Shown: one piece after another, positions 564 to 38,133 of the stretch
Numbering within the stretch: the stretch's first letter is position 1
Layout: every line of letters starts with the position of its first letter
From: Chiloscyllium plagiosum
Lineage: Eukaryota
Length of the DNA stretch: 40,018 bases
Direction: 5' to 3'
Assembly: GCF_004010195.1 (NCBI RefSeq)
Contig: NC_057726.1
Location: 37,238,092 to 37,278,109, forward strand
Position numbers and translations under genes: made by a program
The notes under the pieces: generated by a model
Databases searched by the model: none
What the model was told of the DNA's origin: nothing
Seen by the model: the letters and a program-made list of their open reading frames with translations, nothing else

Positions 564-647
564 CACAACTCTTCAAGTGTGTCATTCACTTCTAAAGCAC
601 TTCTAAAATAATCGCTCCCTTTCTCACTGATACCATTGTCTCCGAGT
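564..647 (-). CDS. Exon 12: LRR (RLGDNGISEKGSDYFRSALEVNDTLEELW); gene continues beyond the window
   Basis: 84 nt, phase 2-2, TTTGTAG/GTAAGA; ends at a donor site, not a stop. Confidence 0.92.
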
Positions 648-3600
648 CTACAAACAAATATTCTCCATTGTATTAATGAGCACCCACAAAGTACAGCAAT
701 ATGTACAATGAAATCCCTTAAATATGAAAATGTATGAATCACAGATACGCATAACAACAAGAAAATAATAGAGCACTTTTAAAGGAGCCATTCTCTTAAA
801 AATGAATAATGACCTGCCTCCAGCCAAATTAATTCTAAGTAGGAAATCAGATGGGGAATTTGCTGAACCACCACTAACTGAGGCTTTTAACTGGGAAACT
901 GATACTCACGTAAGCCTCTCATAGCACCACCGCTGGTATTCACCCAGTGGTGAGGCTAGGTGGAGTGGTGCAGAAGGAGATCTGACCACGTTCGGAGCCC
1001 ACCGAACGAACCTTAACCGGGTGTGTATGCGTGTGTGTGTCCATCCTTCCTCATTGTACTAATTCAAAGGACCAAGCATCACGACTCAGTACTCCAATGA
1101 AAGACTCATCTCTGTCCTATTTGCCAATCCTTCTCCCATGCAGCCCACCACCGCCTTGGCCTGTGCCTAGTGGGTACGTGAAGCAGCAGATACTAGCTCC
1201 CTTGTGTCATTTAATAATTAGCACTGCTGGCTTCTGGAGGGTAAGCAGTTCTTGCTGGGTGGGACGTCTGCCGTTTGGGTCCTTGATTCTGGGAAAGGTC
1301 CACCACTGCCCAGTTAAATGATTGATCAGATTTAACAACAAAGATGGGACAGATGGTTTGCGCATGTTTCCAGCTCGCAGGTGGCATTCCCAATGCCTCT
1401 GTCCAATGTAGCCAAAGCTCACTGCAAACATCAGCCAGGCTCAGCCCATGAGCACACAGACAAGTGCTAAACCACCAAGCAATAAAAAATGTGAGTAAAA
1501 GCAAACTTAAAAGCTCACCTGAAAATAGGTGAACCTGGGAGAGATTGGGATTGGAAAAAACATTCTTCTGCGAGTGTACATTTAAGCACTTACCTTAGTT
1601 CAACCAAGCTGCGATTTTTTTTCATTGCTTCTGCCATATACATTGCACCTTCATCCCCGATCTTGTTAAATTGCAAGCTGAAACAGGACACACATATATT
1701 TAATTTCCCTTCAATAATGAGAACAGCCCTCTTGGCACCAAACTAACTCAATTCATTAATATTTTGAGCAGTTTGGGAAAAAAAGGAAACTCATTACACT
1801 CCTCGGTTCAATCTTCAACATATATTAAGTTAGCTCATTTAACTTGAGGTGGTCATGGAGCATTGGTTCATAGCCTGTAGGTGAAAGAGTGATAATGAAA
1901 TTGAACCAGGCTTTCTAGTTTTTGAGCTAGTGACTTCTACACTGCCACCTATTGATGAGGAGGGAAGAACAGCTTCAGGTATAGTTGTAATAATGGCTGT
2001 GAATATTAGAGATTCATGAATGAGGAAATGCATCCATAGCATGATGGAACCATCCTGTGCTTTCAGAAAGGGAGGGGGAAATGGGGATTTAGAGAAAGGA
2101 AAGTTGAATTCTTGAGGGGTAATGGTGCAGTGCTTTGGAACATCAAGCGCTCTACCATTCATTTGTAGAGTGCAGGACCACAAGTATCTCGTCTCATATG
2201 GTGGGAACCTTTCTCTGGCCAAGCAAAATGAAGACCATGAATAAAGAGAAAAAGCTCCAGAATTCCTCAGGTGGGAATGATCTCATTAATTTGTAAGGTA
2301 GTTTTATTTGCATGGATCAGGTGTAAGGCTGTTTTTGAAAACAGTTTCTCCATTGTTGACAGTAACTTTGGTGCTCATTTTCCCTTTGTAATGGAAATTT
2401 CCCAATGCCATTTGCTACTGCCCCAGGCAATTAGTTCTATAGACAAGGGTGCTAATTTGCGCTACTATTGGGGTCCATAGTCAATCCTGTGGAAGCCAAT
2501 ATACCAGCACTCTGTGGACCACCTATTATCAATATACAGTCACATTGCAGCATTGTAGTGAGAGCTCCTAGCTTAAGGAAAGCCAATCAACTGTTCTAAC
2601 AGTGAGTACTTTTAACTTAGCAAAGGACATAACTTCCTCTGAGGTATTGAGGAAATGGGTGGTGACAGAGTATGTCTTCCAGTGGGTTCAGGCCCTATTT
2701 TTAAATAAACACATTTAGAGAACAGTTCATATATTAATAAATTAATAATGTAATTGTGTCTCTCATTATACCTGGGTGATACAGTTACTTTTATCTTAGG
2801 TTTATTAAATAATGAAACACACAAGTTAATTTGTCAACAGTCCAGGAAGCAGAGTATTGAGAATTCCTCTTCATCAAGATAAGGATCCACAATGGACTTG
2901 AAATGGGAACCATGAACAGTGCTGTCATGAAATTTAGTAATATCCACGGGTAGTGCACACAAAATTTGAGGAAACAATACCCGAAAACTCGCAACGTTGT
3001 GTTCATCTCCAGGGCTTCAGCAATCGAACGGGCACCTTTAGCTCGGACAGAATTTGCCCTTAATCTAGTGAAATCAGAGAGATTTTGTTAAAATAAACAA
3101 AGTAAAACCATCAGTCATCATAACAGCAGTTAATTTTGTTAATAAATTCTCTTGCAAGTTTGACAAACATTTGATTTTGCTAAGTTGAATACATACCCCA
3201 ATGTTTTCAGACTACTGTTTGTTTTCAATGCATCAGCTATTTGAGCTGCTCCTTTTTCCTGTATGGAGTTGTGCTTTAACCTGTGAAGATTCCAGATATT
3301 CAGACAGTATAACATTTGTATCATTTGCTTGGACCTGAAGCTAGCAATACACAAATATCCATGGACACTGTAGTCCATCAGGTCACTGATAGCATCTGAT
3401 TTACTTATAACTGATTTGGAAATTTCCCAATTAATTTAGGACGCATGGCATACAGGGAAATTATTTATTGCAGTTAAACAGAGAAATGCAAGCTCTTACA
3501 GTACAAAACACATCAGAAACAGTTATTTTCATGTGCTAAACATGTGTTAATTTAATGTTGCATTTATTAAACTGCTTTTAACTTGAATCAGAAACACAAT

Positions 3601-6600: not shown

Positions 6601-9600
6601 AGTATATTAGTCCCCTTCCAATTTATGTGCAATGCGTCCTTCTTACACAGGTCACTTCTACCCCAAAAGAACTTCCAATGATCCAAAAATGTGAATCCTT
6701 CTCCCATACATCAGCTCCTCAGCCATGCATTCAGCTGCTCTATCCTTCTATTCCTGCCCTCACTAGCTCGTAGCACCGGGAGTAATCCAGATATTACTAC
6801 TCTCAAGGACCTCCTTTTTAAATTTCTGTCTAACTCTCTGTAATCTCTCTTCAGAGTCTCAATCCTTTCCCTTCCAACGTTGTTGGTTCCAATGTGTACA
6901 ATGACCTCCTGCTGGCCCCTCTCCCCTGTGAGAACATTCTGCGCCCTCTCTGAGACATCCTTGATCCTGGCACCAGGGAAATAACACACCATTCAGATTT
7001 TTTGCTGCTGGCCACAGAAACGTCTGTTTGTACCTCGGACTAGAGAGTCCCCCTAACACAAATGATCGCGTGGAATCCATCATGCTTTAAGATTACTATC
7101 CTGACGTATTCACTGATTTGTTTAACATTTGTTTAAAGATTTTGTTTTAAACAGTGAATGCTGATGTTACTGTAAGAAATCTCGTTTGGAAAAGTTAGCA
7201 TTGCAAAATACCTACATATGTGATATAATATTCACTGAAAATCCAATGATTAAATACTACTTCTATGCTAACAGATTTTTTTTAAATCATTTACTTCAAT
7301 GAGTCCTCCCAATTTCTGTACTGGCATTAGCTACAGTACAATCTAATAAAACAAAAATAACAATACAATAGTGTACTAATCATAACTTTTAACAATTTAA
7401 TCTTTTAGATATACAAAGTAAGTCCAGGCTTCTATAAAGTACAAAGTTAAGAACCTGAAAACAAAACTGTTGATCAACACAATGATACAACAGTTCAAGA
7501 AAAGAGTTTAGAATTAACTTTGTTATTCTTTGGCTGTGAATTTTAACTCGTAAAAAGTCAGTTTTTAACGAACAACATTTTGTTTAGTTTATATCTTCAT
7601 CGTGAACCAAAATTTGCAATTGATATTTGATTTTATCCACTCTGCCATTTTTAAGATGTGAAACAGATGAAGGCAATTTACCTTAAAATTTCTATTCTGC
7701 ACGTCTTACTTCTGAGTGCATTTGCAATGATCTCTGCTCCTTCATCTTCCAGCATGTTTCCCTCTAAACTGTGAATGAAAGGAAAATTATCATCATCTTG
7801 TTCACCTGGTATTTGTGAATATTCTTCAGCTAATGAAATATTCATTCCTGTAGCTGCATTGGGTGAACAACTCAATTTTAGGTAGCTCATTTCTGTTCAT
7901 GGCCTCCTATGCTTCTCATTGACCCAGGACTGACCCCTGGCTTTATGATAAGGATAGAGGGGGTGATATGCCAGATCATGAGGTTGCAGACTGTAGATGA
8001 GTGCAACTGTGCTCCTGCTGATGGCCCACAGTGACTCATGGATGTCCAGTCTTGAGTTGTAGATCACTTTGAAACCTATTCCATTCCCCACAGCAAAATG
8101 GACAGCAACCTCAATATGAAAGCAGGGCTGTGTCACCTGAAGGACTAGGTGCTGTTCATTCCTACTGGTATTGAATGTATGTACCTGCTACAGGTAGATT
8201 GGTGGGGATGAGGTCAAGTATGTTGTAAGGCCAGTTTTACAGTGGTGGGGTAGGGGGATGGGGTGGTGTTAAGGGAGTTGCAAAGAATGGTAGTTGGCAG
8301 TGAGATTTCACAAGGACCAGAGTAAATGTTAAAGGGCAACTCCCTCCTGACTGTGTTACCATCTCTGGAAATGGTGATGGGTGACAGCTGATGGAAGATT
8401 TGGTGCCGTCTGTAGGATTTTATCGAGCTGGTCTGTGGAGCAACTCGCAATTTTTACACAAGCTCACTCCTAAGATTAGTAAAGAGGACTTTGCAGGGTT
8501 GACTGGGATGGGTGCCCTCTTGTTGTTTTTGACAATGCCGTAATGTCAATCCAGTTTCACTCCTTTTATTATACTTTGTCGCAGTTAGATACAACTGAGT
8601 GACTTGCTAGACCACTTCAAGAGGGGAGTAAAGACTCAATGACATTGTTCAGAGTCAATCACATTGCTATGAGTCTGGAGTCACATGTAGACCAGACAAA
8701 ACAAGGAATGCAGATTTATTTTCCTAAAGGGCATTAATGAGTCAGACTTATTTTCACGGATTTGTTTCCACAAAGCTTTTCATTGTGTCTGGTTACACGT
8801 GACAATATATTCAATTCAATTCAATTGTTTTTATGGCATTCGACAATGGTTTTATGGTGACTAAAAGACAAGTTTCTAATTCCAGATTTATTAATTGAAC
8901 TAATAATTCACTATGTAAGATGGTGGGATTCAAACTTGTGTCCACCAGCATTAGAACTGGGCCACTAACTCCCTGTTGACCTGTAGGAAAAGGTACAGAG
9001 AATTGACCTAAGGCTGGGTTCTGAAATTGGGATTTTGAGGAGGTAACAGGCAATGGGGTTTTAGATCAAAAATCCAAAATATCGGGGCTGATAGCACGAT
9101 TGCCAGTTATGGGTGGAATGCTCATGAAACTAGAGTTTCCAGGCAGAATTATAGGGAGTTAGAGAAATTAGGAACAATAAAATGATTGGCAAATTCAAAT
9201 TAGAAGGATGAGAATTAATTTGAGGCACTGCTGGATCCGGAGCCAACATGGGAAGAAGGAGTGATGGATCATGGATGAATGCAGGCAGGGGATTTTGCTG
9301 AGTTGAAATTTAATGAATTATGAAGCCTACCAGGAGAACATTGGAACAGCCAAACCTATGTGACAGGGGCATGGATGGAAGTTTTAGCAATGGCTGTGTT
9401 TGCTGACACCAGCATATGTGAACCATGCGCTGCTTTAAATTACATTGGGGTTGGGTTTGTTGGGGTGGGAATGAGGGGAGACTGGGAGGACCATAGAAAA
9501 AGAGTGTCCGCCCACCCACCAAAACTGTCCCATGCACCCTTTCCCCACCACTGAAACCCTATTCAAATTCTTGTGCACAATACTTTTGCATGTGATGTCA

Positions 9601-27600: not shown

Positions 27601-30600
27601 TCCACAATCAGCATCCTGTTCCTGCCTTATTCCCATAACCCTTGATTTCACTATCTTTGAGAGCTCTCTTTCTTGAAAGTATCCAGAGACTTGCCCTCCA
27701 CTGCCTTCTGGGGCAGAGTATTCCATATATCCACCACTCTCTGGGTAAAGAAGTTTCTCCTCAACTCTGTTCTAAATGGCCTACCCCTTATTTTTAAACT
27801 GTATCATCTGGTTCTGGAAACATACTTCCTGCCTCCAGAGTGTCCAATCCTTTCATAATCCTGTACGGCTCAATCAGATCCCCTCTCATCCTTCTAAACT
27901 CAAGTGTCTACAAGCCCAGTTGCTCCAATCTTCCTACATATGATAGTCCCACAATTCTGGGAATTGACCTCGTGAACCTACGCTGCACTTCCTCAATAGC
28001 CAGAATTTCCTTCCTCAAATTTGGAGACCAAAACTGCACACAATACTCCAGGTGCAGTCTCACCAGGGACCTGTACTGCTGTAGAAGGACCTCTTTACTC
28101 CTATAGTTAATTCCTCTTGTTATGACGGCCAGCATGCCATTAGCTTTCTTCACTCCCTGCTGTACCTGCATGCTTGCTTTCATTGACTGATGAGTAAGAG
28201 CACTTAGATCTTGTTTTACTTCCCCTTTACCTAACTTGACCCCAATTAGATAGTAATCTGCCTTTCTGTTCTTGCCACCAAAGTGGATAACCACTGATTT
28301 ATCCACATTAAACTGCACCTGCAATGCATCTGTCCACTCACCTAGCCTATCCAAGTCACCCTGTATTCTCATAACATCCTCCTCACATTGCACCCTGCCA
28401 TCCAGCTTTGTGTCATCAGCAAATTTGCTAATATTACTTTTAATATATTGTAAACAGCTGCAATCCCAGCACTGAACCTTGTGGTGCCCTACTGGTCACC
28501 GCTGGTCATTCTGAAAAGGACCCGTTTATCACTGCTCTTTGCTTCCTGTCAGCCAACCAATTTTCAATCCAAGTCAGTATTTTGTCCCCAATACCATGTG
28601 TCCTAATTTTGCTCACTAATCTCCTATGTGGGACTTTATCAAAGGTTTTCTGAAAGTCCAGGTACACTACAAACACTGGGTCTTCCTTGTCCATCTTCAT
28701 GGTTACATTCTCAAAAAACTCTGGAAGATTAGTCAAGCACAATTTCCCCTTTGTAAATCCATGCTGACTCTGGCCTATCCTGTTACTGCTATCCAAATGA
28801 GTTGTTATTTCATCTTTTATAATTGACTCCAACATCTTTCCCACCACTGATGTCAGGCTAACAATTCCCTGTTTTCTTTCTCCCTCCTTTCTTGACAGGT
28901 GGGACAACATTTGCCACCCTCCAATCCATAGGAATTGATCCTGAATCTATAGAACATTGGAAAATGATTACCAATGTGTCCATGATTTCTAGTTAAGTAC
29001 CCTGGGATGCAGATCATCAGATCCCAGGAACTTATCAGCCTTCAGACCTAATAGTCGATCCCGCCTAATATAAATATAAATTCCCTTCAGTTCATCCATT
29101 ATCCTAGGTTCTTCAGCCACCAATACATCTGGGAGATTGCTTGTTGCTTCCTCAGTGAAGACAGATCCAAAGAACCTATTCAACTCTTCTGCCATTTCCT
29201 TGTTCCCCAGAATAAATTCACCCATTTCTGTCTTCAAGGGACCAATTTTAGTCTTAACCTTTTTTTTTCTATTCACATACCTAAAAAAACTCTTACTATC
29301 CTCCTTTATGTTTTTGGTCAGTTTGCCTTCGTACCTCACTTTTTTTCTCCACATATTGCCTTTTTAATTATCCATTGTTGCTCTTTAAAAAGTTTTCCAG
29401 TCCTTTGACTTCCCACTCATCTTTGCTATGTTATACTTCTTCTCTTTTATCTTTATACAGTGCTTAACTCATCCACAAACTTACTAATCAGACCACCTAC
29501 ATTTTCCTCCAGATCATTTACATATGCTTACATTTATTTACATAACAAGCATGTTAGCATTGATTTCAAGAGGGCTAGAATAAAAGAGGGACGTATTGCT
29601 GAGGATGTAAAAGGCTGTGGTCGTATCGTATTTGGAATATTGTGAGCTGTTTTGGGCCCGTATCTAAAGAGGTATGTGCTGGCCTTGGAGTCACTCCAGA
29701 ACAAGTTTACAAAACTGATCCCGGGGATGAAGGGCTTTCCATATGAGAAGCAGTTGAAGACCCTGGCTCTGTAATCAATGGAGTTTAGAAGGCTGAGGGG
29801 GGAATCTTATTGAAATTTACAGAATACTGAGATAACTGGAAAGAGTGGACATGGAGAAGATCTTTCCATTAGTAGGAGCGACTGGGACTCAAAGGCACAT
29901 GCTCAGGGAGAAGGGATTCCTTTAGAACTGAGATGAAGATGAAGTTCTTTAGCCAGAGGGTGGTGAATCAGTGGAATTTGTTGCTGCAGAATGCTGTGGA
30001 GGCCCAGTCATTGAGTCTATTTAGGAAAGTGATTAGAAAAGGGATCAAGGGTCATGGGGACAAGGCAAGAGAATAAGCTGAGAATTGTACCAGCCATGGT
30101 TGAATAGCAGAGCAAACTCGATGGGCCAAATAATCTAATTCTAGTCCCATATCTTATGGTGTTCATGGCAATGCCTCAACCAATTAGCACCCTTGTTCTC
30201 ATGCACTATAAGCTGTTTCAAAACAAAGATGCTGGAGATCTGAAACAAAAACAGGAACAAAAATTGCTCAAGAATAGCAGCAGGTCTGGCAGCATCTGTG
30301 GGAAGAAAGCAGAGTTAACATTTCAAGTCTGAACTGTGAGTAAATGTTTAAACAAAAATGGTATTTATGCGGTGGAGGGGTAAGCAGATAGATGGAGATG
30401 AAACCTAGAGAGAGAGAGAGAGAGATGTGAAAGGGGTAGATAAACAGGGAGATAATGGATAGCAGGCCGGGACAGCGGCATTATAATGTATACATTCCAT
30501 ATCAATGGTGTATTTTCTCTCTCTGGTTTGACAGTGCTTACATATAAAATTGTCATATTTCTATTTTAAAACAAAGCAGACAAGGCAATGTGCTGTCAGA

Positions 30601-33600
30601 TGCAAACTATAAGTCACAGCAAATGATTAGGTCTGAACCATAGCCTCAGATGGGCAAACCTTTCTGTGCCAGTTCCAATCTTTGCATTTGCTTTACGAGT
30701 CGTTATTATGACCACTTTGAGTCATCAGGCCTATTTTTATGGCCAGATTTAAATGTATGCACACTAGAAAGTAGGCTGGGAGCCTAAACATTCATCATTA
30801 TGACAAACATTACTTTGGTATTAAAAGACATTATCCAGCTAAAGACAACACTGCGTGGTTCTAGAACAAAACTTCTAATAGGATTGAAACACACAAAAAT
30901 AGTCTTGGTGGGTTATCTTCTCTTTTCTTGCCCACTGTGGGAGGGAGCACATCTCAGCTTCTATAGGGATCTCATCACAAGACACCAATCTTCCATGCAC
31001 CTCCCCAGCCCACATGGTGCTTAGTTTAATGTTGAAACTAGAACATAGAACATTGAACATAGAAGAATACAGCGCAGTACAGGCCCTTCGGCCCTCGATG
31101 TTGCGCCGATCCAAGCCCACCTAACCTACACTAGCCCACTATCCTCCATATGCCTATCCAGTGCCCACTTAAATGCCCATAATGAGGGAGAGTCCACCAC
31201 TGCTACTGGCAGGGCATTCCATGAACTCACGACTCGCTGAGTAAAGAACCTACCCCTAGCATCTGTCCTATACCTACCTCCCCTTAATTTAAAGCTATGC
31301 CCCCTTGTAACCATATGACAATGAAACCATCTGAATGGGACAGTGCTGAATGTTTAATTGGCAGCAATACAATATCTACAGTATAAATTTCTCCTGTCAC
31401 TAATGTTGCTGTGTTACAGTCAGCAGTACATTTTGGTGCCACTGAAATGGGTGTTGCTGTGGAGTTTACTGTTAGTACTAATTTCTGGAGCGTAAGGAGA
31501 AGGCTGAGTCTACTCAGTATGTAGACTGTAATTAGAAAACAGTTAGCTCTTAGTTTTGTATCTTACTGAGGCTTAGAGATAACCTGCAGTGCAATTTGTT
31601 TCAAAATGGAAAACATGTCTATAAAATCATCCTCCAAAAGCTGCACAAAATGTTGCATACTTGCATTTGTTATCTATTTGTTGGATTTGGAGTCAATAAC
31701 AATTCTATATTTTGGAGTAACCAAAGTTATTGTACCTTCGAGTGAAATGGCAGATGAAGTGAAGGAGTACAGAGTGGATGCTGAGTCGTTCACTAGTGCT
31801 ACAGCTGGACACGAATCCACGAAGTAAACATATCCACTTAAGTGGATGGTAGGGTGAGGGGGTTAAAGCAAGGAGCAATCCCTTAGCCTGAAAAGTGAGG
31901 CCTGAAGTGTCCTTGATATTAAATCTCTAATTTGCTATTTGACCCTATTTGCTATCCAGCTAATAAATTGTTGGACAGTACAAATGAGGTTGCAGTGGTA
32001 AATGGTGGAGAGCAGCGGGAAATAGCAGCCCCATATTCTTTGAATGCTCCCTTGTCCCTCCCACTCTGCATTCAAGTAATTATGTTTTTAAATCCTTACC
32101 TTGTTGGCTCCAGCTTTATCGAAAGTCCCTTTAAAGGACACTAAAGGTTATGAGCATACTTTTATTTTTTATTACATCTTATTAAAGAAGGCTTCAAAGT
32201 ACTTCACTGGGGGTCTCAGAGCACAGTCAGCAGCCAGCTGTCAGGATTATTATCTCAATACTGTACTACAGAGGAAGTTCTCTGAGATTCCCCCGAGTTC
32301 AGCCTGGAGCTGCTGAGCCACAGCACTGCAGATTCAGCAAAAAATTGTCAAATCTGGTAATGCTCGTCAAGAATTCAATATCCTTGGAAAGAAAGGATTC
32401 ATTTGTGTACAGAACCTGGACTGTTCTGTGCTGCTGTTTGTGTGATTGTACTAAGTCTTGTCTTCCCAAGCCCACTGTTTATTTTTGGTCAGAGAAAGTG
32501 TCCCTTTACAATTACTTTCAAAGGACATGCCTTTTAAAACTTTCAGCTCAAAACTCAGTTTCTAATTAACACTGACCAGCTTTTTATAATTTTTGACTTC
32601 CTAATCCATTCTTTAATTCTCTCCTGGTTTACCCCTCTCGTGCACTGTTGCTAATAGGTGGACTGTGTTCTAATTCTTTCTTCTCCTCTTCCAAATTAGT
32701 GGGTATATTGACGTGGAAAAAAATGTTCAGATGAAGGAAGGCTATTTAGCTTGTGAAAGGATATACCTTTTCATGGATGCATTAAACTTTGCTTCCCACT
32801 ATCCTGTAGAATGGACATTTGTTCATGCTCGGGACAGGAAAATACTTGGTACCCACCTGCAATGATGTGGCAGCACATTTTTCTTGCACCCAAGTTGACA
32901 GTTCACCAGGAAAGCTGTTGAAAANNNNNNNNNNNNNNNNNNNNNNNNNNNNNNNNNNNNNNNNNNNNNNNNNNNNNNNNNNNNNNNNNNNNNNNNNNNN
33001 NNNNNNNNNNNNNNNNNNNNNNNNNNNNNNNNNNNNNNNNNNNNNNNNNNNNNNNNNNNNNNNNNNNNNNNNNNNNNNNNNNNNNNNNNNNNNNNNNNNN
33101 NNNNNNNNNNNNNNNNNNNNNNNNNNNNNNNNNNNNNNNNNNNNNNNNNNNNNNNNNNNNNNNNNNNNNNNNNNNNNNNNNNNNNNNNNNNNNNNNNNNN
33201 NNNNNNNNNNNNNNNNNNNNNNNNNNNNNNNNNNNNNNNNNNNNNNNNNNNNNNNNNNNNNNNNNNNNNNNNNNNNNNNNNNNNNNNNNNNNNNNNNNNN
33301 NNNNNNNNNNNNNNNNNNNNNNNNNNNNNNNNNNNNNNNNNNNNNNNNNNNNNNNNNNNNNNNNNNNNNNNNNNNNNNNNNNNNNNNNNNNNNNNNNNNN
33401 NNNNNNNNNNNNNNNNNNNNNNNNNNNNNNNNNNNNNNNNNNNNNNNNNNNNNNNNNNNNNNNNNNNNNNNNNNNNNNNNNNNNNNNNNNNNNNNNNNNN
33501 NNNNNNNNNNNNNNNNNNNNNNNNNNNNNNNNNNNNNNNNNNNNNNNNNNNNNNNNNNNNNNNNNNNNNNNNNNNNNNNNNNNNNNNNNNNNNNNNNNNN

Positions 33601-36600
33601 NNNNNNNNNNNNNNNNNNNNNNNNNNNNNNNNNNNNNNNNNNNNNNNNNNNNNNNNNNNNNNNNNNNNNNNNNNNNNNNNNNNNNNNNNTTCTCTTGAAT
33701 CATCCTCGCAATCGTTTCTTCTACGTTTCTAGGACTATTGGGAGGCCTGTAAAAGACTCCTAACAGGGTGAGCTCACCTTTCCTATTCCTAACCTCAGCC
33801 CATACTACCTCAGATGGCGAGTCTTCATCCATCGTCCTTTCCACCTCTGTAATACTATCTTTGACAAGCAATGCCACACCTCCCCCTCTTTTACCCTCAC
33901 CTCTGACCCTACTAAAACATTTAAACGCTGGGACCTGCAACAGCCAATCCTGTCCCTGTTCTAGCCATGTCTCCGTAATAGCCACAACATCGAAGTCCCA
34001 GGTACCAACCCACGCTGCAAGTTCACCTACCTTATTTCGTATACTTCTTGCATTGAAGTATACACACTTCAAGCCACTTTCCTGTTTACAGGCACCCTCC
34101 TTTGAAATTGATGCCATGTTCCTAACCTCCCTACACTCCAGGTCCTGCACCCTAAAGCTACAGTCTGGATTCCCATGCCCCTGCAGAGTTAGTTTAAACC
34201 CCCCCAAGAGCACTAGCAAACCTCCCACCAAGGATACTGGTGCCCCTCAGGTTCAGGTGCAGACCATCCTGTTTATAGAGGTCCCACCTTCCCCAGAAAG
34301 AACCCCAGTTATCCAGTTAGTACAGTGATTTTCTTCCCTTAATAGTAGAAACAGCCTTGTGACTTACCAGTTTATGCCAAAGTTGACATTTTCCAATTTG
34401 AACTCAGTTTAATTTAGAATAGTTTTTCATAATTGAAAGAGCAATTTGTAGGAATACAACAACAATTCAGGAAGTACTGTAATGTGTTATTTCTATTTCT
34501 TTGTGCCACCTTTATTTGGAGTTTCTGAGCATGATTTCTCGATTAGGTTTGAACCATAAGCAGTCATGGATCGCACTCAAAATCCTTAAGGACTTTCAGG
34601 AGCTGTCAGGCAGAGGTGACTTTTAAACCTCTTAATGTAAGTTAGATTATATTCAAACCAGATTAGATCAAATTCAAACCCTGAGGTGACTGCTACTAAC
34701 TTAATGCTGTCAAACCTCTCTTTCATACTCTTTGATTTCTTTACAGTTATTCACCCTGAGATACTAAAATTTAACTTTTCTCATTCTGTCAATAGGCTGG
34801 TTTTTGAAGCTCTTTCATCTTCAGACAGTTTTTCTGTTTGATCTTCGCAGCTACCTATTTTTACACATCGTAGATAATTTATCAGTCTGCCAGCCAGAAT
34901 GGATCACTTTTGCCATTCAGCTTTATTTTGTTTCATATAAATTCCCTCCTCTATTAATTTATTTGGGCAGGAGTCTCCCTGTACATTACAAGTTTACTTT
35001 CCATAAACCAAACTTGTTCACTCACACATATAAGTATAATTTTTTCAGGCTCACTGCACAAAAGTGTGAAACCTGTTCCACTCCAGTCGCTCAGTAATTT
35101 TTAATTCTTTACCATCTTTTCCATAACATAAAGTTTTGACTGGCAATTCCTCACCAGCACATTGTAGTTAAGTCTAGTTTCCAACCTGAATTGTTCCCAC
35201 ATTAGAGCTTTACAAGAATGACCCTGGAAATGGAGGGCTTGTCATATGAGGAGCAGTTGAGGACTGTACTCGATGGAGTTTAGAAAGATAAGAGGGCTCT
35301 CGTTAACATTTACAGGATAGAGTGGACACGGAGAAGATGTTTCCACTAGTAAGAGAGACAAGGACCAGAGGGCCCAGACTCAGTGAAGGGACAACCCTTT
35401 AGAAGTGAGATGAGGACGAAATGCTGCAGCCAGAGGTTGGTGAATCTGCAGCACTCATTGCTGCAGAGGGCTTTGGCAACCAAGTATTTAAGGCAAAGAT
35501 AGATAGGTTCTTGATTAATGAGGGGATCAAAGATTATGGGGAGAAGATAGGAGAATGGGATTGAGAAACACATCAGCGATGATTGAATGGCAGTGCAGAC
35601 TCAGTGGGCTAAATGGCCTATTTTTCATATCTTACGGCCTTACAGAAACTCACCTGGTGGATATTTTGGCATCCAGAAATGTACCTTCTCCACTGAGGTA
35701 ACTTGAAGTGTTTTCAATTTGAGTTTGGAAGTGCTTTTCTTTCATCACTTCTTACTGACTGTTACATTAAAAACTGTGAATGGATCTCAACAAAATCATG
35801 GTCAAGATCTTTTAGTTTGATCAGGTGATGTCAAATTATTTGTCACTTTACATCAACCTGCTTCCAACTGACAGTATTCACATCTGTATAATTTTCTCAT
35901 CCTACGTTTTAAACTTCTCACCACTATGAATGCTTATCCACACCATTAATGTTTCCAGAGAAGACAGTAAGTAAAGGAAAACCTCCAGAGGTCCTAAAGG
36001 TTTACACTTTAGGCATTATTTTTCACTCACCTGTTACCGACAGAGTAACTTTCCCTGTGGCTTTGTCAGAAAATACTGTCACTGTGCAGGAGTATGACCC
36101 AATGTCGTAAATCGTAACATTTTTTAGGAGTAAAGAAGCATTTGCTTTGCTTATTTCATTTATAGAGAGACTTGATCCTGGTCTATAGCTTTCATATTCT
36201 CCAAAGTCAAACAAGCAAACAGTTTTTTCCTCATTTCCCACTCTATGGTTCCACTCAATGACAATGTATCTCAAATCAACTGCAACAGCGCGTGAAAACG
36301 TGCAGCCAAGGAGGACATCTTCCCCAAAGGTGGCACTGACAGCTGGTGTGAGCATCACCTCCAGTGAAACTGCAATAAAAATAATAGACATCAAAAGAGA
36401 GTAGGGTCGATACATAGTTTATTAATCATTAATTTTATTTGTCAGCATTCCAAGAAGGAACAAATGGCTAGCAGTTTCAGGACCCAGCAGCTGGGAAACT
36501 CATTGGGTCATGTTTCATTCTTATAGTTGCTACACTTCGGAGAAACACTTGCTTGGCTATAAGGCTTATTATTACACAGAGACCTGGGAAAAAGGCTGCA

Positions 36601-38133
36601 TTAATACAAGTCCGATGTCTCCCCCCTCCGCCCCATCCACACCTCCAGCCAGATGAGCAGAGGCATTAAGTCGTGATGTGGGTGGGAGAGAAGGAAGGGG
36701 AGGGGAGAGGCGGGCAAGTTTGGCTGCCATTGGGTTGAGGGGGCCATGCTGTCAGCTGCCATTGCAAAATCAGACAGAAGCTTGTTTCGGGTTGAGCTGG
36801 ACACATACAATTTGCCTGTTTTGGCTTGAACTTACACTTTAAAAAAATCTGTCTCTTTGGTGAAAGTCACTTGCTACATTAGAAAGTGGCAAAATGACAC
36901 TGCACCTCAAACAAATATATTAAATATGCTCTCCACAGATGATGCCAGACCTGCTGAGTTTTTACAGCAATTTCTGTTTTTGTTTCTGATTTACACCATC
37001 CATAGCTCTTTCGATTTTTATTTAGTATTAAATCTGCTATTTTGCAGGGCTCTTCATCTCGGTGAATTTGCAGCGAGCTGTATGGACAAGACAGGTCAAA
37101 TTGTGACTTTTCTTCACTGTAACAATTCTGTGATTACAGGTGACTTTAATGCATTCAGTTCTCAATATCCGTGAGGGATTGGGGCATGAACTTCCCATGT
37201 ATAACAATAAGCACGATACCACTCCTATGTACCTCAAAGGACCGCAATGTTTACTGAGGCAAACTGGGTGAGACAATGGGATAAAAAGAGGTCTGGGGTA
37301 GACTTCACAAGTTCGAGGGTAGCAGATAGCAAGGCGTGAGCACACCACAGGAAGTTTTGAAGGGCTCAAATACATATTTGAATACTGCAGTGACTCTTTT
37401 GGAGGTTAATAGATAATTACTTAAATTTACTGAGTGCTGTCGCTTCAGGATAATATTTCTTGTCAGATTCATAACAGAGAGAGTTTGAAGCTTGCGCAAG
37501 AAAGAAACCAATTCAAGGCAGACATGTCTGATGGACGAAGGGAAAAACCAAAACTGACAAATTACAATATAGTAGCCAGAACTCTTTCACTTGTTTGCAA
37601 GTCACTCTGTAGGTTAGCCTTGGCTAGGGTGATGTGCTTCCTCTCCAAAAGGTGAATTTTTAACCAAACAACAGTAGTTACAGAGTCACTGTTTAGCTAG
37701 CTGTTATACTGAATTCAAACTTCACTATCTGCTATAGTAATATCTAAAGCAATGTCCACATCTCAGGATGCTGTTCTGGATTACTTGTCCAAAGACACTA
37801 AGACTATGCCACTGTTTCCTTATTTTCTCTCCCTCCTGAAGAAAAATAACTTCAGAAACCACTGTAGTCTTTAGATATTTAATTGTTTTGAGTAATGTGC
37901 AACATACCAAATATCATATTTATTGCTTCACTAAAAGAACTTTCATCAAAATATATATTTCCCCTTTCTAAGCCTGAAATGAAGGCCTACACTTCACATC
38001 ACCCCTTTCATATCCGAAAAGCTACAAAGAAATGACTTCCTTGTTTATAGTAACAGAGAGATAAAGCAATTCTCCACTTACCCGCTAAGGGGACAAAACA
38101 AAATATAATCAGTTCTACTAAAAAGCAATTCAT
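564..38133 (-). CDS. Spliced gene, 3'-incomplete: type I membrane protein SP-IgV-IgC1-TM-(cytoplasmic IgC1-like)-CARD-NACHT-LRR. Exons: 38133-38082, 36369-36031, 25003-24674, 22881-22771, 19542-19108, 14431-13994, 12814-11086, 7768-7682, 3280-3197, 3064-2981, 1677-1594, 647-564
   Basis: Manual splicing: every intron is GT..AG and phases match (1,1,1,1,1,1,2,2,2,2,2), with no stop in 3857 nt. The individual exons are well supported. Their joining into one transcript, especially 19108 to 14431, is inference. Confidence 0.8.
1594..1677 (-). CDS. Exon 11: LRR (GLQFNKIGDEGAMYMAEAMKKNRSLVELR)
   Basis: 84 nt, phase 2-2, TTTCAG/GTAAGT; not in the ORF track. Confidence 0.93.
2981..3064 (-). CDS. Exon 10: LRR (GLRANSVRAKGARSIAEALEMNTTLRVFG)
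   Basis: 84 nt, phase 2-2, CACTAG/GTATTG. Confidence 0.92.
3197..3280 (-). CDS. Exon 9: LRR (RLKHNSIQEKGAAQIADALKTNSSLKTLG)
   Basis: 84 nt, phase 2-2, CACAG/GTATGT; NLRC3/NOD-type 28-aa LRR exon. Confidence 0.93.
3732..7083 (-). mobile_element. Long 5'-truncated CR1-clade LINE (ORF1 SGNH-esterase part, ORF2 APE endonuclease + RT), frameshifted
   Basis: ORF1-like VCYFPGARIKDV...VIVHIGTNNV; endonuclease YFNARGL...VAITETWL; RT YLDFSKAFDK, GVPQGSVLGPLLF, KFADDTK, LVRPLLECCMQFWSP. Short-repeat tail (catagtcatag) near 3740. Confidence 0.93.
7682..7768 (-). CDS. Exon 8: LRR (SLEGNMLEDEGAEIIANALRSKTCRIEILR)
   Basis: 87 nt, phase 2-2, CACAG/GTAAAT; ribonuclease-inhibitor-type LRR of NLRs. Confidence 0.92.
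7890..8960. repeat. Old degenerate interspersed repeat (LINE/SINE-like)
   Basis: Resembles common elasmobranch retroelement-derived sequence (recalled similarity only); no intact motif; boundaries approximate. Confidence 0.3.
10553..10916 (-). mobile_element. Penelope-like element 3' fragment/pLTR with 15-bp flanking duplication
   Basis: Shares the GTTGCTGGAAAAGCACAGCAGGTCAGGCAGCATCC terminus with other copies. Minus strand encodes the ORF end GTLQPHGINVDFTNF. Flanks AGCATCATTT[C/A]AATG at 10538-10552 and 10917-10931. Confidence 0.75.
11086..12814 (-). CDS. Exon 7: NACHT NTPase + HD1/WHD/HD2 + first LRR-like units (NOD1/NLRC3-like)
   Basis: TTACAG acceptor, AG|GTATTA donor, 1729 nt, phase 1-2. 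Walker A GVAGIGKS (12525-12548), FSFRELN, Walker B ILFLFDGLDE, sensor ILITSRP, EILGFS, LCYVP, FFHLTHQEFFAA, LRFTAGL, HCLYE. Confidence 0.96.
13994..14431 (-). CDS. Exon 6: CARD (death-fold) domain plus linker
   Basis: TTAACAG acceptor, GAAG|GTAGGC donor, 438 nt, phase 1-1. RRTVVNYI...LLNLLVNKKIISEDDHNAI...KGRTLLDMLSHRGQESCANFLNVL matches the CARD pattern of NOD1/NLRC-type proteins. Confidence 0.88.
16260..17430 (+). mobile_element. Degenerate CR1-like LINE 3' fragments interrupted by a SINE
   Basis: ERVFPLVGESLTRGHNLRV...MRRNFFS...LWDSL is the CR1 ORF2 C-terminus; boundaries approximate. Confidence 0.8.
16395..16670 (-). mobile_element. HE1/V-SINE-like SINE (partial)
   Basis: Reverse complement resembles the copy at 23642-23980 (TGTATGGAGTTTGCACATTCTCCC, GTGCAGGTTAGGTG core), with a CR1-like tail. 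Confidence 0.75.
18300..18910 (+). mobile_element. Degenerate L2-clade LINE 3' fragment
   Basis: Plus strand reads AAETVNHAFVTSSPDLSKTLL, a decayed form of the L2 'HAFVTSRLDYxNxLL' motif. Confidence 0.7.
19108..19542 (-). CDS. Exon 5: atypical C1-like Ig domain, predicted cytoplasmic, with a long internal insertion and F-strand Cys replaced by Phe
   Basis: TTTTTTTCAG acceptor, AAG|GTGAGT donor, 435 nt, phase 1-1. VAPKV...LACAVLWFKPKAVKVSW...GAYSLVSQLTF...IYSFEVQHDAL. Confidence 0.88.
19770..19942 (+). repeat. Possible solo-LTR-like remnant
   Basis: CCCTGATTGG/CCAATCAGGG short inverted CCAAT pair followed by AATAAA; termini not established. Confidence 0.3.
20220..21010 (+). mobile_element. 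Degenerate CR1-like LINE 3' end, host to a nested Penelope-derived palindrome
   Basis: YKLIRLQLECFLQFWNPQYRRDAIALERLQRRFTRIL; RTFFSTQGVMRICNSLP. Confidence 0.85.
20679..20883. mobile_element. Palindromic Penelope-pLTR-derived insertion
   Basis: Inverted arms about 68 bp centred on GAGGAA-AG-TTCCTC near 20815; ACTTGCAATGTGA duplicated at 20666-20678 and 20882-20894. Confidence 0.8.
21133..21343. mobile_element. Older palindromic Penelope-pLTR-derived insertion
   Basis: Imperfect inverted arms; TAACA[C/G]TAGAATCAGA duplicated at 21123-21138 and 21343-21358. Confidence 0.75.
22662..22694. repeat. About 33-bp Penelope-pLTR terminus fragment
   Basis: AAATGTGTTGCTGGAAAAGCGCAGCAGGTCA is identical to part of the copies near 20719-20749 and 26676-26706. 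Confidence 0.7.
22771..22881 (-). CDS. Exon 4: transmembrane exon GSNPRIRSGT-LFTFLLTFVITMAICFWTFIFC-NNQGK
   Basis: Acceptor TTTCTCTAG, donor AAG|GTAAAT, 111 nt, phase 1-1, open in the required frame. Contains 22 uncharged hydrophobic residues. Not in the ORF track. Confidence 0.88.
23490..23652. repeat. 60-bp perfect direct duplication flanking a 43-bp retroelement tail
   Basis: 23490-23549 equals 23593-23652; the insert is ATTAGATTAGATTACTTACAGTGTGGAAACAGGCCCTTCGGCC. Confidence 0.9.
23642..23980 (+). mobile_element. HE1/V-SINE-like tRNA-derived SINE
   Basis: tRNA-like head (GTTAGCACTGCTGCCTCACAG...GCTTGATTCC), V-domain-like core, and CR1-like tail (GATGGGCCAAATGGCCTC...GGATTCTATG). Confidence 0.8.
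24674..25003 (-). CDS. Exon 3: Ig C1-set domain
   Basis: TTTGTAG acceptor, GTAAGT donor, 330 nt, phase 1-1. APPTVSV...ICEMKNFYPKNHSIFW...NEDGTFNLLSFL...YVCKVIHEAL has the C1 hallmarks CxxxxFYP and YxCxVxH. Confidence 0.93.
26240..26630 (+). mobile_element. CR1-like RT fragment
   Basis: Reads DVIDLDFQKAFDKVLHRRLLNK...YINDL...FANDTK. Confidence 0.85.
26632..27306. mobile_element. Penelope-like element (GIY-YIG) fragment with internal inversion
   Basis: About 26632-26890 is the pLTR/3' end in minus orientation. About 26893-27306 on the plus strand encodes RTPLVLTYHP and PGTFPCNRKKCKTC...IIYCIRCTRCGLLYIGETGRLL (Cys linker + GIY-YIG). Confidence 0.88.
27307..29470 (-). mobile_element. CR1-like LINE ORF2 fragments (at least two pieces), degenerate
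   Basis: WAEKWQMEFNPNKC; VSLTSVVGKMLESII, YLDFQKTFDKVPH, LVRLHLEYCVQFWSP. Confidence 0.9.
29555..30160 (+). mobile_element. Degenerate CR1-like LINE 3' end
   Basis: TTCTTTAGCCAGAGGGTGGTGAATCAGTGGAAT (FFSQRVVNQWN) and a CR1 3' tail. Confidence 0.8.
30223..30480. repeat. Older Penelope-like terminal fragment (related copy in opposite orientation at about 36928-36995)
   Basis: GATGCTGGAGATCTGAAACAAAAACAG...CAGCAGGTCTGGCAGCATCTGTGG resembles the pLTR copies. Confidence 0.5.
31035..31312 (-). mobile_element. Short CR1-like 3' end with short-repeat tail
   Basis: TRGHSFKLRGGRYRTDARGRFFTQRVVSSWNALP; CATAGAA repeats at 31040-31065. Confidence 0.88.
32925..33689. other. Assembly gap (765 N) in the IgV-IgC1 intron
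   Basis: Run of N. Confidence 1.
33690..34315 (-). mobile_element. CR1-like LINE ORF1 end/ORF2 endonuclease start, truncated by the gap
   Basis: LKCVYFNARSIRNKVGEL...VAITETWL...GGGVALLVK...GVFYRPPN. Confidence 0.92.
35205..35640 (+). mobile_element. Degenerate CR1-like LINE 3' end
   Basis: Similar to 29700-30160. Confidence 0.75.
36031..36369 (-). CDS. Exon 2: Ig V-set domain (B7/NCR3LG1-like)
   Basis: TTGCAG acceptor, GTGAGT donor, 339 nt, phase 1-1. LGCTF...IEWNH...NASLLLKNVTIYDIGSYSCTV has the canonical B-strand Cys, C-strand Trp and DxGxYxC. Sequons NAS and NVT. Confidence 0.93.
38082..38133 (-). CDS. Exon 1: signal peptide MNCFLVELIIFCFVPLA
   Basis: ATG at 38133 (A at -3), 17 codons + 1 nt, hydrophobic core, donor G|GTAAGT. 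This is the typical phase-1 leader exon of Ig-superfamily genes. Confidence 0.85.

What the first reader, a model, noticed from the sequence alone, without database searches (positions are those of the whole stretch)
564..38133. Candidate transmembrane receptor-NLR: B7/NCR3LG1-like IgV-IgC1 ectodomain and TM fused to CARD-NACHT-LRR
Seen: 12 minus-strand exons splice with canonical sites and matching phases into one stop-free frame of about 1285 aa, in the order SP, IgV, IgC1, TM, Ig-like, CARD, NACHT, LRR. Established: vertebrate NLRs (NOD1/2, NLRC3, NLRC5, NLRPs) are soluble cytosolic proteins without signal peptides or ectodomains, and V-C1-TM is the B7/butyrophilin/NCR3LG1 layout. Inference: this is a membrane-spanning immune receptor. 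An extracellular or lumenal ligand, or a lymphocyte counter-receptor, could cluster a membrane-tethered NACHT and expose a CARD. Alternatively, cytosolic sensing by the LRR could be relayed outward to immune cells. I know of no described vertebrate protein with this architecture, but could not search.
Basis: partly seen in the sequence, partly recalled or inferred. Interest (0 to 1): 0.96.

Follow-up and report, generated by a model that had tools for sequence, protein, structure and literature searches.

The report
Shark B7H6-like transmembrane NLR gene
A bamboo-shark gene joins a cell-surface B7H6-type immunoglobulin ectodomain and a membrane anchor to a cytosolic CARD-NACHT-LRR danger sensor, a layout kept across sharks and rays that sits in sequence databases under misleading names.

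Summary
Confirmed. Twelve minus-strand exons (38133-564; AG/GT sites, matching phases, 3,857 coding nt) encode SP-IgV-IgC1-TM-C1-like Ig-CARD-NACHT-LRR. The N gap lies in a LINE inside the IgV-IgC1 intron and touches no exon.

Intron-less contigs from 4 of 4 runs (4 studies) join Ig3 to CARD at 19108/14431 and run 454-933 nt further 5'. Their 2-nt overhang fits the TM exon as the upstream partner.

The same architecture is modelled in at least 17 shark and ray species. A nurse-shark entry (QTT61908.1) is named B7H6. No unfused orthologue was found; the nearest NACHTs are at most 36% identical (NLRP3-like). The Ig-TM-Ig module is B7H6-type.

Best reading: a type I membrane protein whose cytosolic NLR is tethered to an NKp30-ligand-like ectodomain. 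The direction of signalling is inferred only.

Ten literature searches found no vertebrate description; sea-cucumber AjNLRC4 is the nearest precedent, and the likeliest source paper was not held. Earlier scan notes list B7-H6-like genes elsewhere in this genome, but no NLR fusion on other DNA.

The parts
38082..38133 (-). E1: ATG and signal-peptide exon (17 codons plus 1 nt). The 5'UTR extent is not determined.
   Evidence: Donor gtaagt, phase 1. 100% identical to P0160 residues 1-17. Hydrophobic window at 4-22, score 2.33.
36031..36369 (-). E2: IgV (V-set) domain exon, phase 1-1.
   Evidence: Pfam V-set 1.1e-9. Best solved relatives are CD276/B7-H3 at 5e-11, B7-H4 and B7H6 at 2e-6. Cys40 and Cys112 are kept in 15 of 15 orthologues.
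24674..25003 (-). E3: IgC1 (C1-set) domain exon, phase 1-1.
   Evidence: Pfam C1-set 1.2e-11. Cys154 is kept in 14 of 15 and Cys220 in 15 of 15 orthologues.
22771..22881 (-). E4: transmembrane exon, 111 nt, phase 1-1.
   Evidence: Hydropathy 2.37 over 19 residues. A hydrophobic segment is kept in all 12 aligned species and in 35 of 36 models. The 2-nt overhang of RNA contigs at 19544 fits this exon's end.
19108..19542 (-). E5: post-membrane C1-like Ig domain ('Ig3'). The second Cys is replaced by Phe, and there is an insertion of about 35 aa.
   Evidence: Partial C1-set match, 2.8e-6. Two halves match Ig constant domains. C23, W37 and F124 are invariant in 16 rows. The exon is covered by RNA contigs.
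13994..14431 (-). E6: CARD exon, phase 1-1, with no start codon of its own before the CARD.
   Evidence: Pfam CARD 1.5e-11. Best solved matches are ICEBERG at 3e-7 and NOD1 CARD at 6e-4. Spliced to 19108 in 4 of 4 runs.
11086..12814 (-). E7: NACHT, helical domains and first LRR-like stretch; phase 1 to 2.
   Evidence: NACHT 1.9e-35 and HD2 1.1e-10. Walker A GVAGIGKS, Walker B LFLFDGLDE and TSRP are nearly invariant. Best solved match is NLRP3 at 2.4e-41.
7682..7768 (-). E8: LRR exon, 87 nt, phase 2-2.
3197..3280 (-). E9: LRR exon, 84 nt.
2981..3064 (-). E10: LRR exon, 84 nt.
1594..1677 (-). E11: LRR exon, 84 nt.
564..647 (-). E12: LRR exon, 84 nt. The last coding exon (27 aa) lies outside the window.
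32925..33689 (.). Assembly gap, intronic (E2-E3 intron), inside a LINE copy.
   Evidence: for the N run. Exo_endo_phos 2e-10 is encoded at 33692-34231 on the minus strand.
30092..30166 (-). Alternative first coding exon of RefSeq isoform X3 (P0170). It replaces the SP and IgV.
   Evidence: tblastn 25 of 25 identical.
26172..26394 (-). Alternative first coding exon of RefSeq isoform X2 (P0172). It replaces the SP and IgV.
   Evidence: tblastn 74 of 74 identical.

Best explanation
This is one gene of the whitespotted bamboo shark. It makes one main transcript, which encodes a type I membrane protein.

Predicted layout:
- The signal peptide, a B7H6-type IgV and an IgC1 face the outside or the lumen.
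- One helix spans the membrane.
- A disulfide-less C1-like Ig domain, a CARD, an ATPase-competent NACHT and about six RI-type LRRs lie in the cytosol.

Shown: the exons, the Ig3-CARD splice, and the conservation across species.

Inferred from sequence rules: the topology.

Inferred from analogy: the mechanism. The LRR/NACHT senses a cytosolic danger or microbial cue. It oligomerises at the membrane, as NLRs do. This has two effects at once. It brings CARDs together for a caspase-1- or RIPK2-type partner. It also clusters the B7H6-like ectodomains, so that NKp30-family receptors on lymphocytes see an infected or stressed cell. This is inside-out signalling, as with the B30.2 domain of butyrophilin BTN3A1 (recalled knowledge).

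The gene probably arose in an elasmobranch ancestor by exon shuffling. The phase-1 exons SP-V-C1-TM-C1' of a B7H6 gene were placed before phase-1 CARD and NACHT exons.

My confidence in the identity and architecture is about 0.9. My confidence in the inside-out mechanism is about 0.4. The figure given is a blend of the two.
For: - Exon structure and domains.
- 100% identity of every exon to P0160 = XP_043562816.1.
- Joint 14428/19105 (= 14431/19108; CT..AC on the plus strand, so GT..AG on the minus strand) in 4 of 4 runs from 4 studies. Introns show zero depth. Contigs of 1262, 3827 and 3695 nt continue 454, 933 and 836 nt upstream of Ig3.
- The three contigs that reach the Ig3 acceptor all stop at 19544, 2 nt past the exon. 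That is what the TM exon end (..AAAAG) predicts. The IgC1 exon end would give 1 nt and the IgV exon end 3 nt.
- Orthologues with V-set, C1-set, NACHT and LRR: 14 of 17 hits, from 12 species. Five more species appear.
- In 36 models, Ig3 and NACHT are in 36 of 36, the TM in 35 of 36 and the CARD in 34 of 36.
- Identity falls with taxonomic distance.
- Walker A/B and sensor motifs are nearly invariant.
- The second Cys of Ig3 is Phe in all 12 aligned species, while the ecto Ig cysteine pairs are kept.
- No unfused orthologue was found. The best NACHT matches outside the group are at most 36% identical and 28-33% identical.
- The Ig module is nearest to NCR3LG1/B7H6 of nurse shark, chimaera, python and turtles. 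These share the V-C1-TM-C1-like order.
- The Ig3 profile matches their post-TM domains best.
Against: - There is no localisation, binding or signalling data of any kind.
- The TM-to-Ig3 joint lay outside the 6-kb stretch laid. It is inferred from a 2-nt overhang and from database models, and was not seen directly.
- RefSeq also models isoforms without the SP and IgV (5 of 36). One model lacks IgC1 and the TM (P0180).
- Charges flank the helix on both sides, so the positive-inside rule does not decide the topology.
- N-glycosylation sequon counts did not separate ecto from cytosolic parts, because the LRR consensus itself makes sequons.
- Against one sister-species contig (X5), the CARD and Ig3 exons show 13 non-synonymous and 3 synonymous changes. 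That is no sign of constraint at that short range. X7 gave 8 non-synonymous and 9 synonymous.
- No orthologue was seen in the chimaera Callorhinchus.
- Canonical B7H6 proteins keep cysteine pairs in several post-TM Ig domains. This leaves some doubt about how the hydrophobic segment behaves in this family.
- The run type 'RNA' was a guess by the tool. Only the intron-less contigs argue for RNA.
Confidence: 0.55

Rival explanations
1. Outside-in receptor. A lymphocyte counter-receptor (NKp30-like) or another extracellular ligand cross-links the ectodomain. This brings the tethered NACHT modules together and exposes the CARD. The engaged cell then activates a caspase or NF-kB and dies or inflames.
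For: The architecture is the same as in the best explanation. Induced proximity is enough for many CARD and death-fold pathways (established knowledge, recalled). The ectodomain is as conserved as a receptor-ligand surface would be: 67-73% IgV identity between sharks and rays, against 75-80% for the NACHT.
Against: It leaves the conserved LRRs and the intact ATPase motifs without a task. NLRs are normally auto-inhibited by their LRRs until a cytosolic cue arrives. No data bear on this either way.
Confidence: 0.25
2. Membrane pattern-recognition receptor for microbes. The Ig ectodomain binds microbial surfaces at the plasma membrane or in the phagosome lumen, and the NACHT side drives uptake or signalling, as reported for sea-cucumber AjNLRC4.
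For: Precedent: AjNLRC4 has extracellular Ig domains, is in the membrane, has an intracellular NACHT and acts as a phagocytic receptor (PMC8699970, abstract and passages read).
Against: The ectodomain is a B7H6-type V-C1 pair, whose known partners are host receptors. It is single-copy and moderately conserved, not diversified. AjNLRC4 lacks a CARD and LRRs and has two membrane segments.
Confidence: 0.1
3. Two neighbouring genes (a B7H6-like gene and a CARD-NACHT-LRR gene) are merged by annotation or by occasional read-through splicing, helped by the shared phase-1 exon structure.
For: Phase 1-1 exons are the rule in both Ig-superfamily and NLR genes, so matching phases alone prove little. An AATAAA lies 26 nt after the Ig3 donor, and read-through of the TM exon stops after two codons. 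Short Ig-only products are therefore conceivable.
Against: The Ig3-CARD joint is the only joint at 14431 listed in 4 of 4 runs, and the same contigs continue on both sides. The CARD exon has no start codon. Only one weak ATG-exon candidate exists in the 4.7-kb intron, and it has no read support. The fusion is modelled in at least 17 species, and no unfused orthologue exists in the databases searched.
Confidence: 0.04
4. Assembly misjoin, at the N gap or between 14431 and 19108, brings unrelated exons together.
For: A gap of unknown length lies inside the locus at 32925-32689 region boundaries 32925-33689.
Against: The gap is intronic and inside a LINE. Independent transcript contigs cross the 19108/14431 junction. 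Sixteen other assemblies and species give the same exon order.
Confidence: 0.01

Closest known systems
B7H6 / NCR3LG1 of non-mammalian jawed vertebrates (nurse shark P0306, Callorhinchus P0307, python P0308, turtles P0165 and P0166)
   Same: Both have a signal peptide, V-set, C-type Ig, one hydrophobic helix at about residues 260-295, and then a C1-like Ig domain directly after the helix. These proteins are the best non-self matches of the Ig module: E 3e-47 to 7e-31 and 1e-30. The Ig3 profile matches their post-helix domains best. The nurse-shark orthologue of the window's gene is itself named B7H6 in GenBank.
   Different: Those proteins continue with about six C1-like domains and end there. 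This one has a single such domain followed by CARD-NACHT-LRR. Identity is only 26-28%. Binding to NKp30 is known for human B7H6 (recalled) and is untested here.
Chondrichthyan 'NLRP3-like' NLRs and the vertebrate NLRP/NOD clade
   Same: NACHT, NOD2_WH/HD2-type helical domains and RI-type LRRs on short phase 2-2 exons. The best solved match is NLRP3 at 2.4e-41, then NLRP1, NLRP6 and NOD2. The CARD is a regular death-fold CARD.
   Different: Only 28-36% identity to any other NACHT, so it is not an orthologue of NLRC3, NOD1 or NLRP3, despite the automatic RefSeq names. It has a signal peptide, an ectodomain and a membrane helix, which no described vertebrate NLR has (recalled; none turned up in my searches).
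Sea-cucumber AjNLRC4 and AjNLR-new (PMC8699970, PMC13133943)
   Same: A membrane protein that combines Ig domains with a NACHT. AjNLRC4 has the Ig outside and the NACHT inside, and is shown experimentally at the cell membrane (passages read).
   Different: It is an invertebrate protein with two membrane segments, no CARD and no LRR. Its Ig domains are not B7-type, and it is reported as a phagocytic receptor for Vibrio. Homology to the shark gene was not tested and is unlikely to be more than convergent domain shuffling.
Butyrophilins (BTN3A1/BTN2A1), B7-related IgV-IgC-TM-B30.2 proteins (recalled)
   Same: A B7-family ectodomain is coupled through one helix to a cytosolic sensor domain. This is the accepted example of inside-out signalling to lymphocytes.
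   Different: The sensor there is a B30.2/SPRY domain. No SPRY/PRY hit appears in P0160. This is a functional analogy only.

Membership tests
NLR (NACHT-LRR) family | NACHT NTPase domain with Walker A and Walker B motifs | tested here: met
   Pfam NACHT 1.9e-35. GVAGIGKS and LFLFDGLDE are present and nearly invariant in 15 orthologues.
NLR (NACHT-LRR) family | C-terminal leucine-rich repeats | tested here: met
   Five 84-87-nt LRR exons. LRR_6 2.8e-12 in P0160.
NLR (NACHT-LRR) family | Soluble cytosolic protein without signal peptide or membrane segment (the usual vertebrate condition, not a formal criterion) | tested here: not met
   N-terminal hydrophobic leader and a 19-residue segment with hydropathy 2.37, in 8 of 8 orthologues scanned for the TM.
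NLRC subfamily / NLRC3 or NOD1 orthology (the RefSeq names) | N-terminal CARD next to the NACHT | tested here: met
   Pfam CARD 1.5e-11, directly upstream of the NACHT exon.
NLRC subfamily / NLRC3 or NOD1 orthology (the RefSeq names) | Orthology to NLRC3 or NOD1 (closest sequence relatives) | tested here: not met
   Outside its own group the NACHT is at most 36% identical to anything. The named best hits are NLRP3-like. Among solved structures, NLRP3 at 2e-41 beats NOD2 at 2.5e-28. No tree was built.
B7 family / B7H6 (NCR3LG1) | Signal peptide, IgV, IgC, single TM in that order | tested here: met
B7 family / B7H6 (NCR3LG1) | Closest relatives of the Ig module are B7H6 proteins | tested here: met
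   Nurse-shark B7H6 at 3e-47, Callorhinchus at 2e-46 and python NCR3LG1 at 7e-31. Turtle NCR3LG1 at 1e-30. GenBank names the nurse-shark orthologue B7H6.
B7 family / B7H6 (NCR3LG1) | Binds NKp30 (NCR3) | not testable with these tools
   Needs a binding assay. The scan's notes list NKp30-like genes in this genome, which I did not check.
Butyrophilin | Cytosolic B30.2 (PRY/SPRY) domain | tested here: not met
   No SPRY/PRY family among the 13 Pfam families found in P0160.
Echinoderm Ig-TM-NACHT receptors (AjNLRC4 type) | Ig outside, TM, NACHT inside, no CARD, no LRR | tested here: not met
   This protein has both a CARD and LRRs, and one helix rather than two (against passages read). Sequence relation was not tested.

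The most novel reading that the evidence does not exclude
Elasmobranchs wire an NLR danger sensor directly to an NK/T-cell ligand. Activation of the cytosolic CARD-NACHT-LRR part changes the clustering or conformation of its own B7H6-type ectodomain. An infected cell thereby both triggers its CARD pathway and flags itself to NKp30-family receptors. This would be a one-polypeptide link between inflammasome-type sensing and lymphocyte recognition, not known in any vertebrate.
Probability: 0.3. Interest if true: 0.9.

Novelty: new variant of a known kind. Interest (0 to 1): 0.72.

Why it matters
Textbook vertebrate NLRs are soluble cytosolic sensors. Here a complete NLR is built onto a signal peptide, a B7H6-type ectodomain and a membrane helix, and the whole has been kept since before sharks and rays split.

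If the protein sits in the membrane as predicted, it physically couples two systems that are studied apart: NLR/CARD signalling and the B7H6-NKp30 axis of NK-cell recognition. It then offers a simple, testable model of how intracellular danger could be shown at the cell surface.

It also shows that automatic names ("NLRC3-like", "NOD1-like", "B7H6") can hide a conserved domain fusion.

Its value is lowered because the sequences are already public, and at least one laboratory has handled the nurse-shark orthologue.

Tried and rejected
- **Two-gene or read-through reading:** rejected on the RNA joints and the lack of any unfused orthologue.
- **Independent ATG exon for the CARD inside 14432-19107:** only one weak candidate (ATG 17640, 22 nt) was found, with no read depth there.
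- **Short-range selection test:** differences came from two sister-species contigs. X5 gave 3 synonymous and 13 non-synonymous; X7 gave 9 and 8; X2 gave 2 and 0. The sample is too small and the results too mixed to use.
- **N-glycosylation sequon density as a topology test:** not discriminating, because the LRR consensus itself creates conserved sequons.
- **Positive-inside rule:** ambiguous.
- **Rfam on the highly covered repeat at 16200-17500:** 0 matches.
- **Whale-shark genome paper (PMC8455134):** the passages read mention no Ig or membrane NLR.
- **Papers not held:** Kinlein et al. 2021 (PMC8273117), Ohta and Flajnik 2015 (PMC4594805) and Flajnik et al. 2012 (PMC3709836). These are the most likely places for a description. 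I know them only from reference lists and from memory.
- **Literature searches, all ten used:**. One search (B7H6 together with NACHT) found 0 papers. The spelling 'B7-H6' was not searched.
- **Joined model:** I searched the window's model exon by exon and left the joined step out. Full-length work used database proteins returned by the tools.

Full report
**What is in the sequence**

On the minus strand, the window holds twelve exons that behave as one coding unit. All internal boundaries have AG acceptors and GT donors.

The phases chain without a break:
- E1 (38133-38082) starts at an ATG and ends in phase 1.
- E2 to E6 are symmetric phase 1-1 exons. They are IgV 36369-36031, IgC1 25003-24674, TM 22881-22771, a third Ig-like exon 19542-19108, and CARD 14431-13994.
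- E7 (12814-11086, NACHT) runs from phase 1 to phase 2.
- Five LRR exons of 87 or 84 nt are phase 2-2: 7768-7682, 3280-3197, 3064-2981, 1677-1594 and 647-564.

The total is 3,857 nt with no in-frame stop.

Each large exon was translated and scanned on its own. All five reached Pfam's curated cut-offs: V-set, C1-set, a partial C1-set, CARD and NACHT plus HD2.

I searched the model exon by exon and left the joined step out.

**The gap**

The N run at 32925-33689 lies in the 11-kb intron between the IgV and IgC1 exons. Next to it on the minus strand is an endonuclease domain of a LINE (Exo_endo_phos 2e-10). No exon is near it, so frame continuity across it does not arise. I did not fill it.

The exon order across it is the same in the database protein of this species and in the orthologues of other species.

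**Identity of the locus**

A phmmer search of the NACHT exon against 1.84 billion cluster representatives gave one close hit, P0001. It is 76% identical and 1168 aa long, and the NACHT exon aligns at its residues 426-999. Every other listed hit was at most 36% identical.

P0001 is XP_069757801.1, 'NLRC3-like isoform X4' of the electric ray Narcine bancroftii. Its sequence reads SP-V-C1-TM-Ig3-NACHT-LRR, without the CARD.

Searching with P0001 returned 17 proteins. Fourteen of them, from 12 shark and ray species, carry V-set, C1-set, NACHT and LRR families, and 12 of those 14 also carry a CARD.

One of them, P0160, is 100% identical to each of the window's seven large exons at consecutive positions. 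P0160 is XP_043562816.1/XP_043562817.1, 'NLR family CARD domain-containing protein 3-like isoform X1' of Chiloscyllium plagiosum. It maps to the window up to residue 1286 of 1313.

The window is therefore this bamboo-shark locus.

**Is it one transcript?**

The look-up of sequencing runs, queried with the CARD-NACHT region, listed 14 runs guessed to be RNA that hold 0.11-0.57 of the words. About 0.65 of that query is exonic.

I laid four of them, from four studies with four organism labels, on 13950-19949. All four contain one contig that skips 14429-19104. After the stated 3-nt shift, this is the 19108/14431 GT..AG intron on the minus strand. The intron bins 14750-16349 and 17350-18149 have zero depth, so these contigs come from spliced RNA.

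The contigs are long:
- One of 3827 nt has 2013 nt 3' of the CARD exon and 933 nt 5' of the Ig3 exon.
- One of 3695 nt has 1984 nt 3' of the CARD exon and 836 nt 5' of the Ig3 exon. The 1984 nt is exactly the NACHT exon plus three LRR exons.
- One of 1262 nt has 454 nt 5' of Ig3.

E4, E3, E2 and E1 together are 832 nt.

The TM-to-Ig3 joint itself lay outside the 6-kb limit, and my single read-laying run was used. There is an indirect read-out, however. All three contigs that reach the Ig3 acceptor stop matching the genome at 19544, two letters beyond the exon.
- The TM exon ends ..AAAAG and the intron ends ..TTCAG, so two letters agree.
- The IgC1 exon end (..CAAGG) would give one letter.
- The IgV exon end (..AACAG) would give three letters.

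This fits E4-E5 and argues against skipping of the TM exon in these transcripts.

Two of the four contig sets differ from the window by about 2% and so come from sister species. One of them carries an in-frame 6-nt insertion in the CARD exon tail.

**Conservation**

Cluster look-ups added five more species: C. punctatum, nurse shark, basking shark, cloudy catshark, and one species whose name was cut off in the output.

Across the 36 models I held:
- Ig3 and NACHT are present in 36 of 36.
- The TM segment is present in 35 of 36. The exception, a Mustelus isoform, lacks IgC1 and the TM.
- The CARD is present in 34 of 36. CARD-less isoforms occur in Narcine and Pristiophorus.
- The IgV is present in 31 of 36. 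The other five are isoforms with other first exons, and two of those first exons lie in this window at 30166-30092 and 26394-26172.

Identity to the bamboo shark falls with taxonomic distance. Against batoids it is NACHT 75-80%, LRR 76-82%, IgV 67-73%, IgC1 64-74%, CARD 57-68%, Ig3 45-55% and TM 41-52%.

Other conserved features:
- The leader and the membrane helix stay hydrophobic in all aligned species.
- The cysteine pairs of IgV and IgC1 are kept.
- In Ig3, the first Cys and the Trp are invariant, but the second Cys is Phe in every species.
- Walker A, Walker B and the TSRP sensor are nearly invariant.

**Relatives of each half**

For the NLR half, a search restricted to proteins of 316-1006 aa found 1221 hits. 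The 120 listed are only 28-33% identical. Nearly all are the expanded 'NLRP3-like' NLRs of cartilaginous fishes, including Callorhinchus. I therefore found no unfused orthologue.

Among solved structures, NLRP3 is the best match at 2.4e-41, ahead of NLRP1, NLRP6 and NOD2. The CARD is nearest ICEBERG and the NOD1 CARD. The RefSeq names NLRC3-like and NOD1-like are thus labels, not orthology.

For the Ig half, the best non-self matches are the following:
- a second nurse-shark protein named B7H6 (P0306, 1092 aa);
- a Callorhinchus protein (P0307, 1106 aa);
- python and turtle NCR3LG1.

All five have leader, V, C, one helix at about 260-295, and then a run of C1-like Ig domains after the helix with no second helix. 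A profile of Ig3 matches those post-helix domains better than their ecto C domain. The best domain E-values are 6e-10, 2e-9 and 4e-8, within very small local databases.

The V-C1-TM-C1-like module is thus a B7H6 family trait. In this gene it is followed by CARD-NACHT-LRR instead of more Ig domains.

**How it most likely works**

Shown: one spliced mRNA, and conserved intact domains.

Inferred from sequence rules: the leader and the single helix give a type I protein, with V-C1 outside and Ig3-CARD-NACHT-LRR in the cytosol. The loss of the Ig3 disulfide fits a reducing compartment.

Inferred by analogy: NLRs oligomerise on activation. A tethered NLR would do so in the plane of the membrane, bringing CARDs together inside and B7H6-type domains together outside.

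I rank the readings as follows:
- Inside-out display to NKp30-family receptors comes first. It is the only reading that gives a task to the LRRs, the ATPase and the ectodomain at once. A B7-related precedent exists in butyrophilins (recalled).
- Outside-in clustering comes second.
- A microbe-binding role like AjNLRC4 comes third.

None of these was tested.

**Against my reading**

- There are no protein data.
- The TM joint is inferred.
- SP-less isoforms and one TM-less isoform are modelled.
- Charge distribution and sequon counts do not decide the topology.
- Short-range substitutions are mixed.
- Cysteine pairs are retained in post-helix domains of canonical B7H6. This leaves open how that helix behaves in the family.

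**Novelty**

The sequences are public in RefSeq, GenBank and UniProt. One is a direct submission from nurse shark named B7H6 with the full NLR tail, so at least one laboratory has seen it.

My ten full-text searches found no paper that describes a vertebrate NLR with an ectodomain and membrane anchor. No held paper contains both 'B7H6' and 'NACHT' (the hyphenated spelling was not searched). The nearest precedent in print is the sea-cucumber AjNLRC4 family.

The papers most likely to mention the shark gene were not held, and supplements were closed. I therefore rate it a new variant of a known kind, with a real chance that it is already noted in print.

As a result there are no orthologous DNA, no codon-based selection test and no fold.
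- Read laying and the look-up of sequencing runs were each used once.

Noticed in passing
P0306 (nurse shark), P0307 (Callorhinchus), P0308 (python), P0165 and P0166 (turtles); not in the window: Canonical B7H6/NCR3LG1 models of non-mammals are 864-1106 aa. They have a single hydrophobic helix after V-C, followed by about six C1-like Ig domains, several with both cysteines kept, and no second helix. An Ig array predicted on the cytosolic side is odd and deserves its own check: alternative use of the TM exon, or a true cytosolic Ig array. Scan notes s1-883541, s1-883827 and s1-885801 report the same layout elsewhere in this genome.
   Followed up: partly
window 26172-26394 and 30092-30166, minus strand: These are alternative first coding exons of RefSeq isoforms X2 and X3, inside the IgV-IgC1 intron. 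The products would start without a signal peptide or IgV but keep IgC1-TM-Ig3-CARD-NACHT-LRR.
   Followed up: partly
window 19045-19108 and 22760-22771, minus strand: An AATAAA lies 26 nt after the Ig3 donor, and the read-through frame stops at 19061. Read-through of the TM exon donor stops after two codons. Short Ig-only or Ig-TM-only products are conceivable. The four contig sets laid showed no read-through below 19105.
   Followed up: partly
window 16350-16750 and 19750-19949: These repeat segments in the introns carry very high contig depth in all four runs, up to about 70,000 in one bin. This is an abundant dispersed repeat in the transcriptomes. It looks like a common elasmobranch SINE-type element (recalled, not tested). 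Rfam gave no match on 16200-17500.
   Followed up: partly
window 3809-7083, 27302-29354 and 33692-34231, minus strand: LINE fragments sit in the same orientation as the gene inside its introns: RVT_1 2.4e-22 and 3.9e-13, Exo_endo_phos 1.2e-5 and 2e-10. One of them holds the assembly gap.
   Followed up: yes
window 13994-14431 (CARD exon) in other species' models: CARD-skipping isoforms are modelled in Narcine (P0001) and Pristiophorus (P0155). The exon is 438 nt and phase 1-1, so skipping keeps the frame and would give a tethered NLR without its effector domain.
   Followed up: partly
window 14024, run X5: A sister-species transcript has an in-frame 6-nt insertion in the linker after the CARD.
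   Followed up: no
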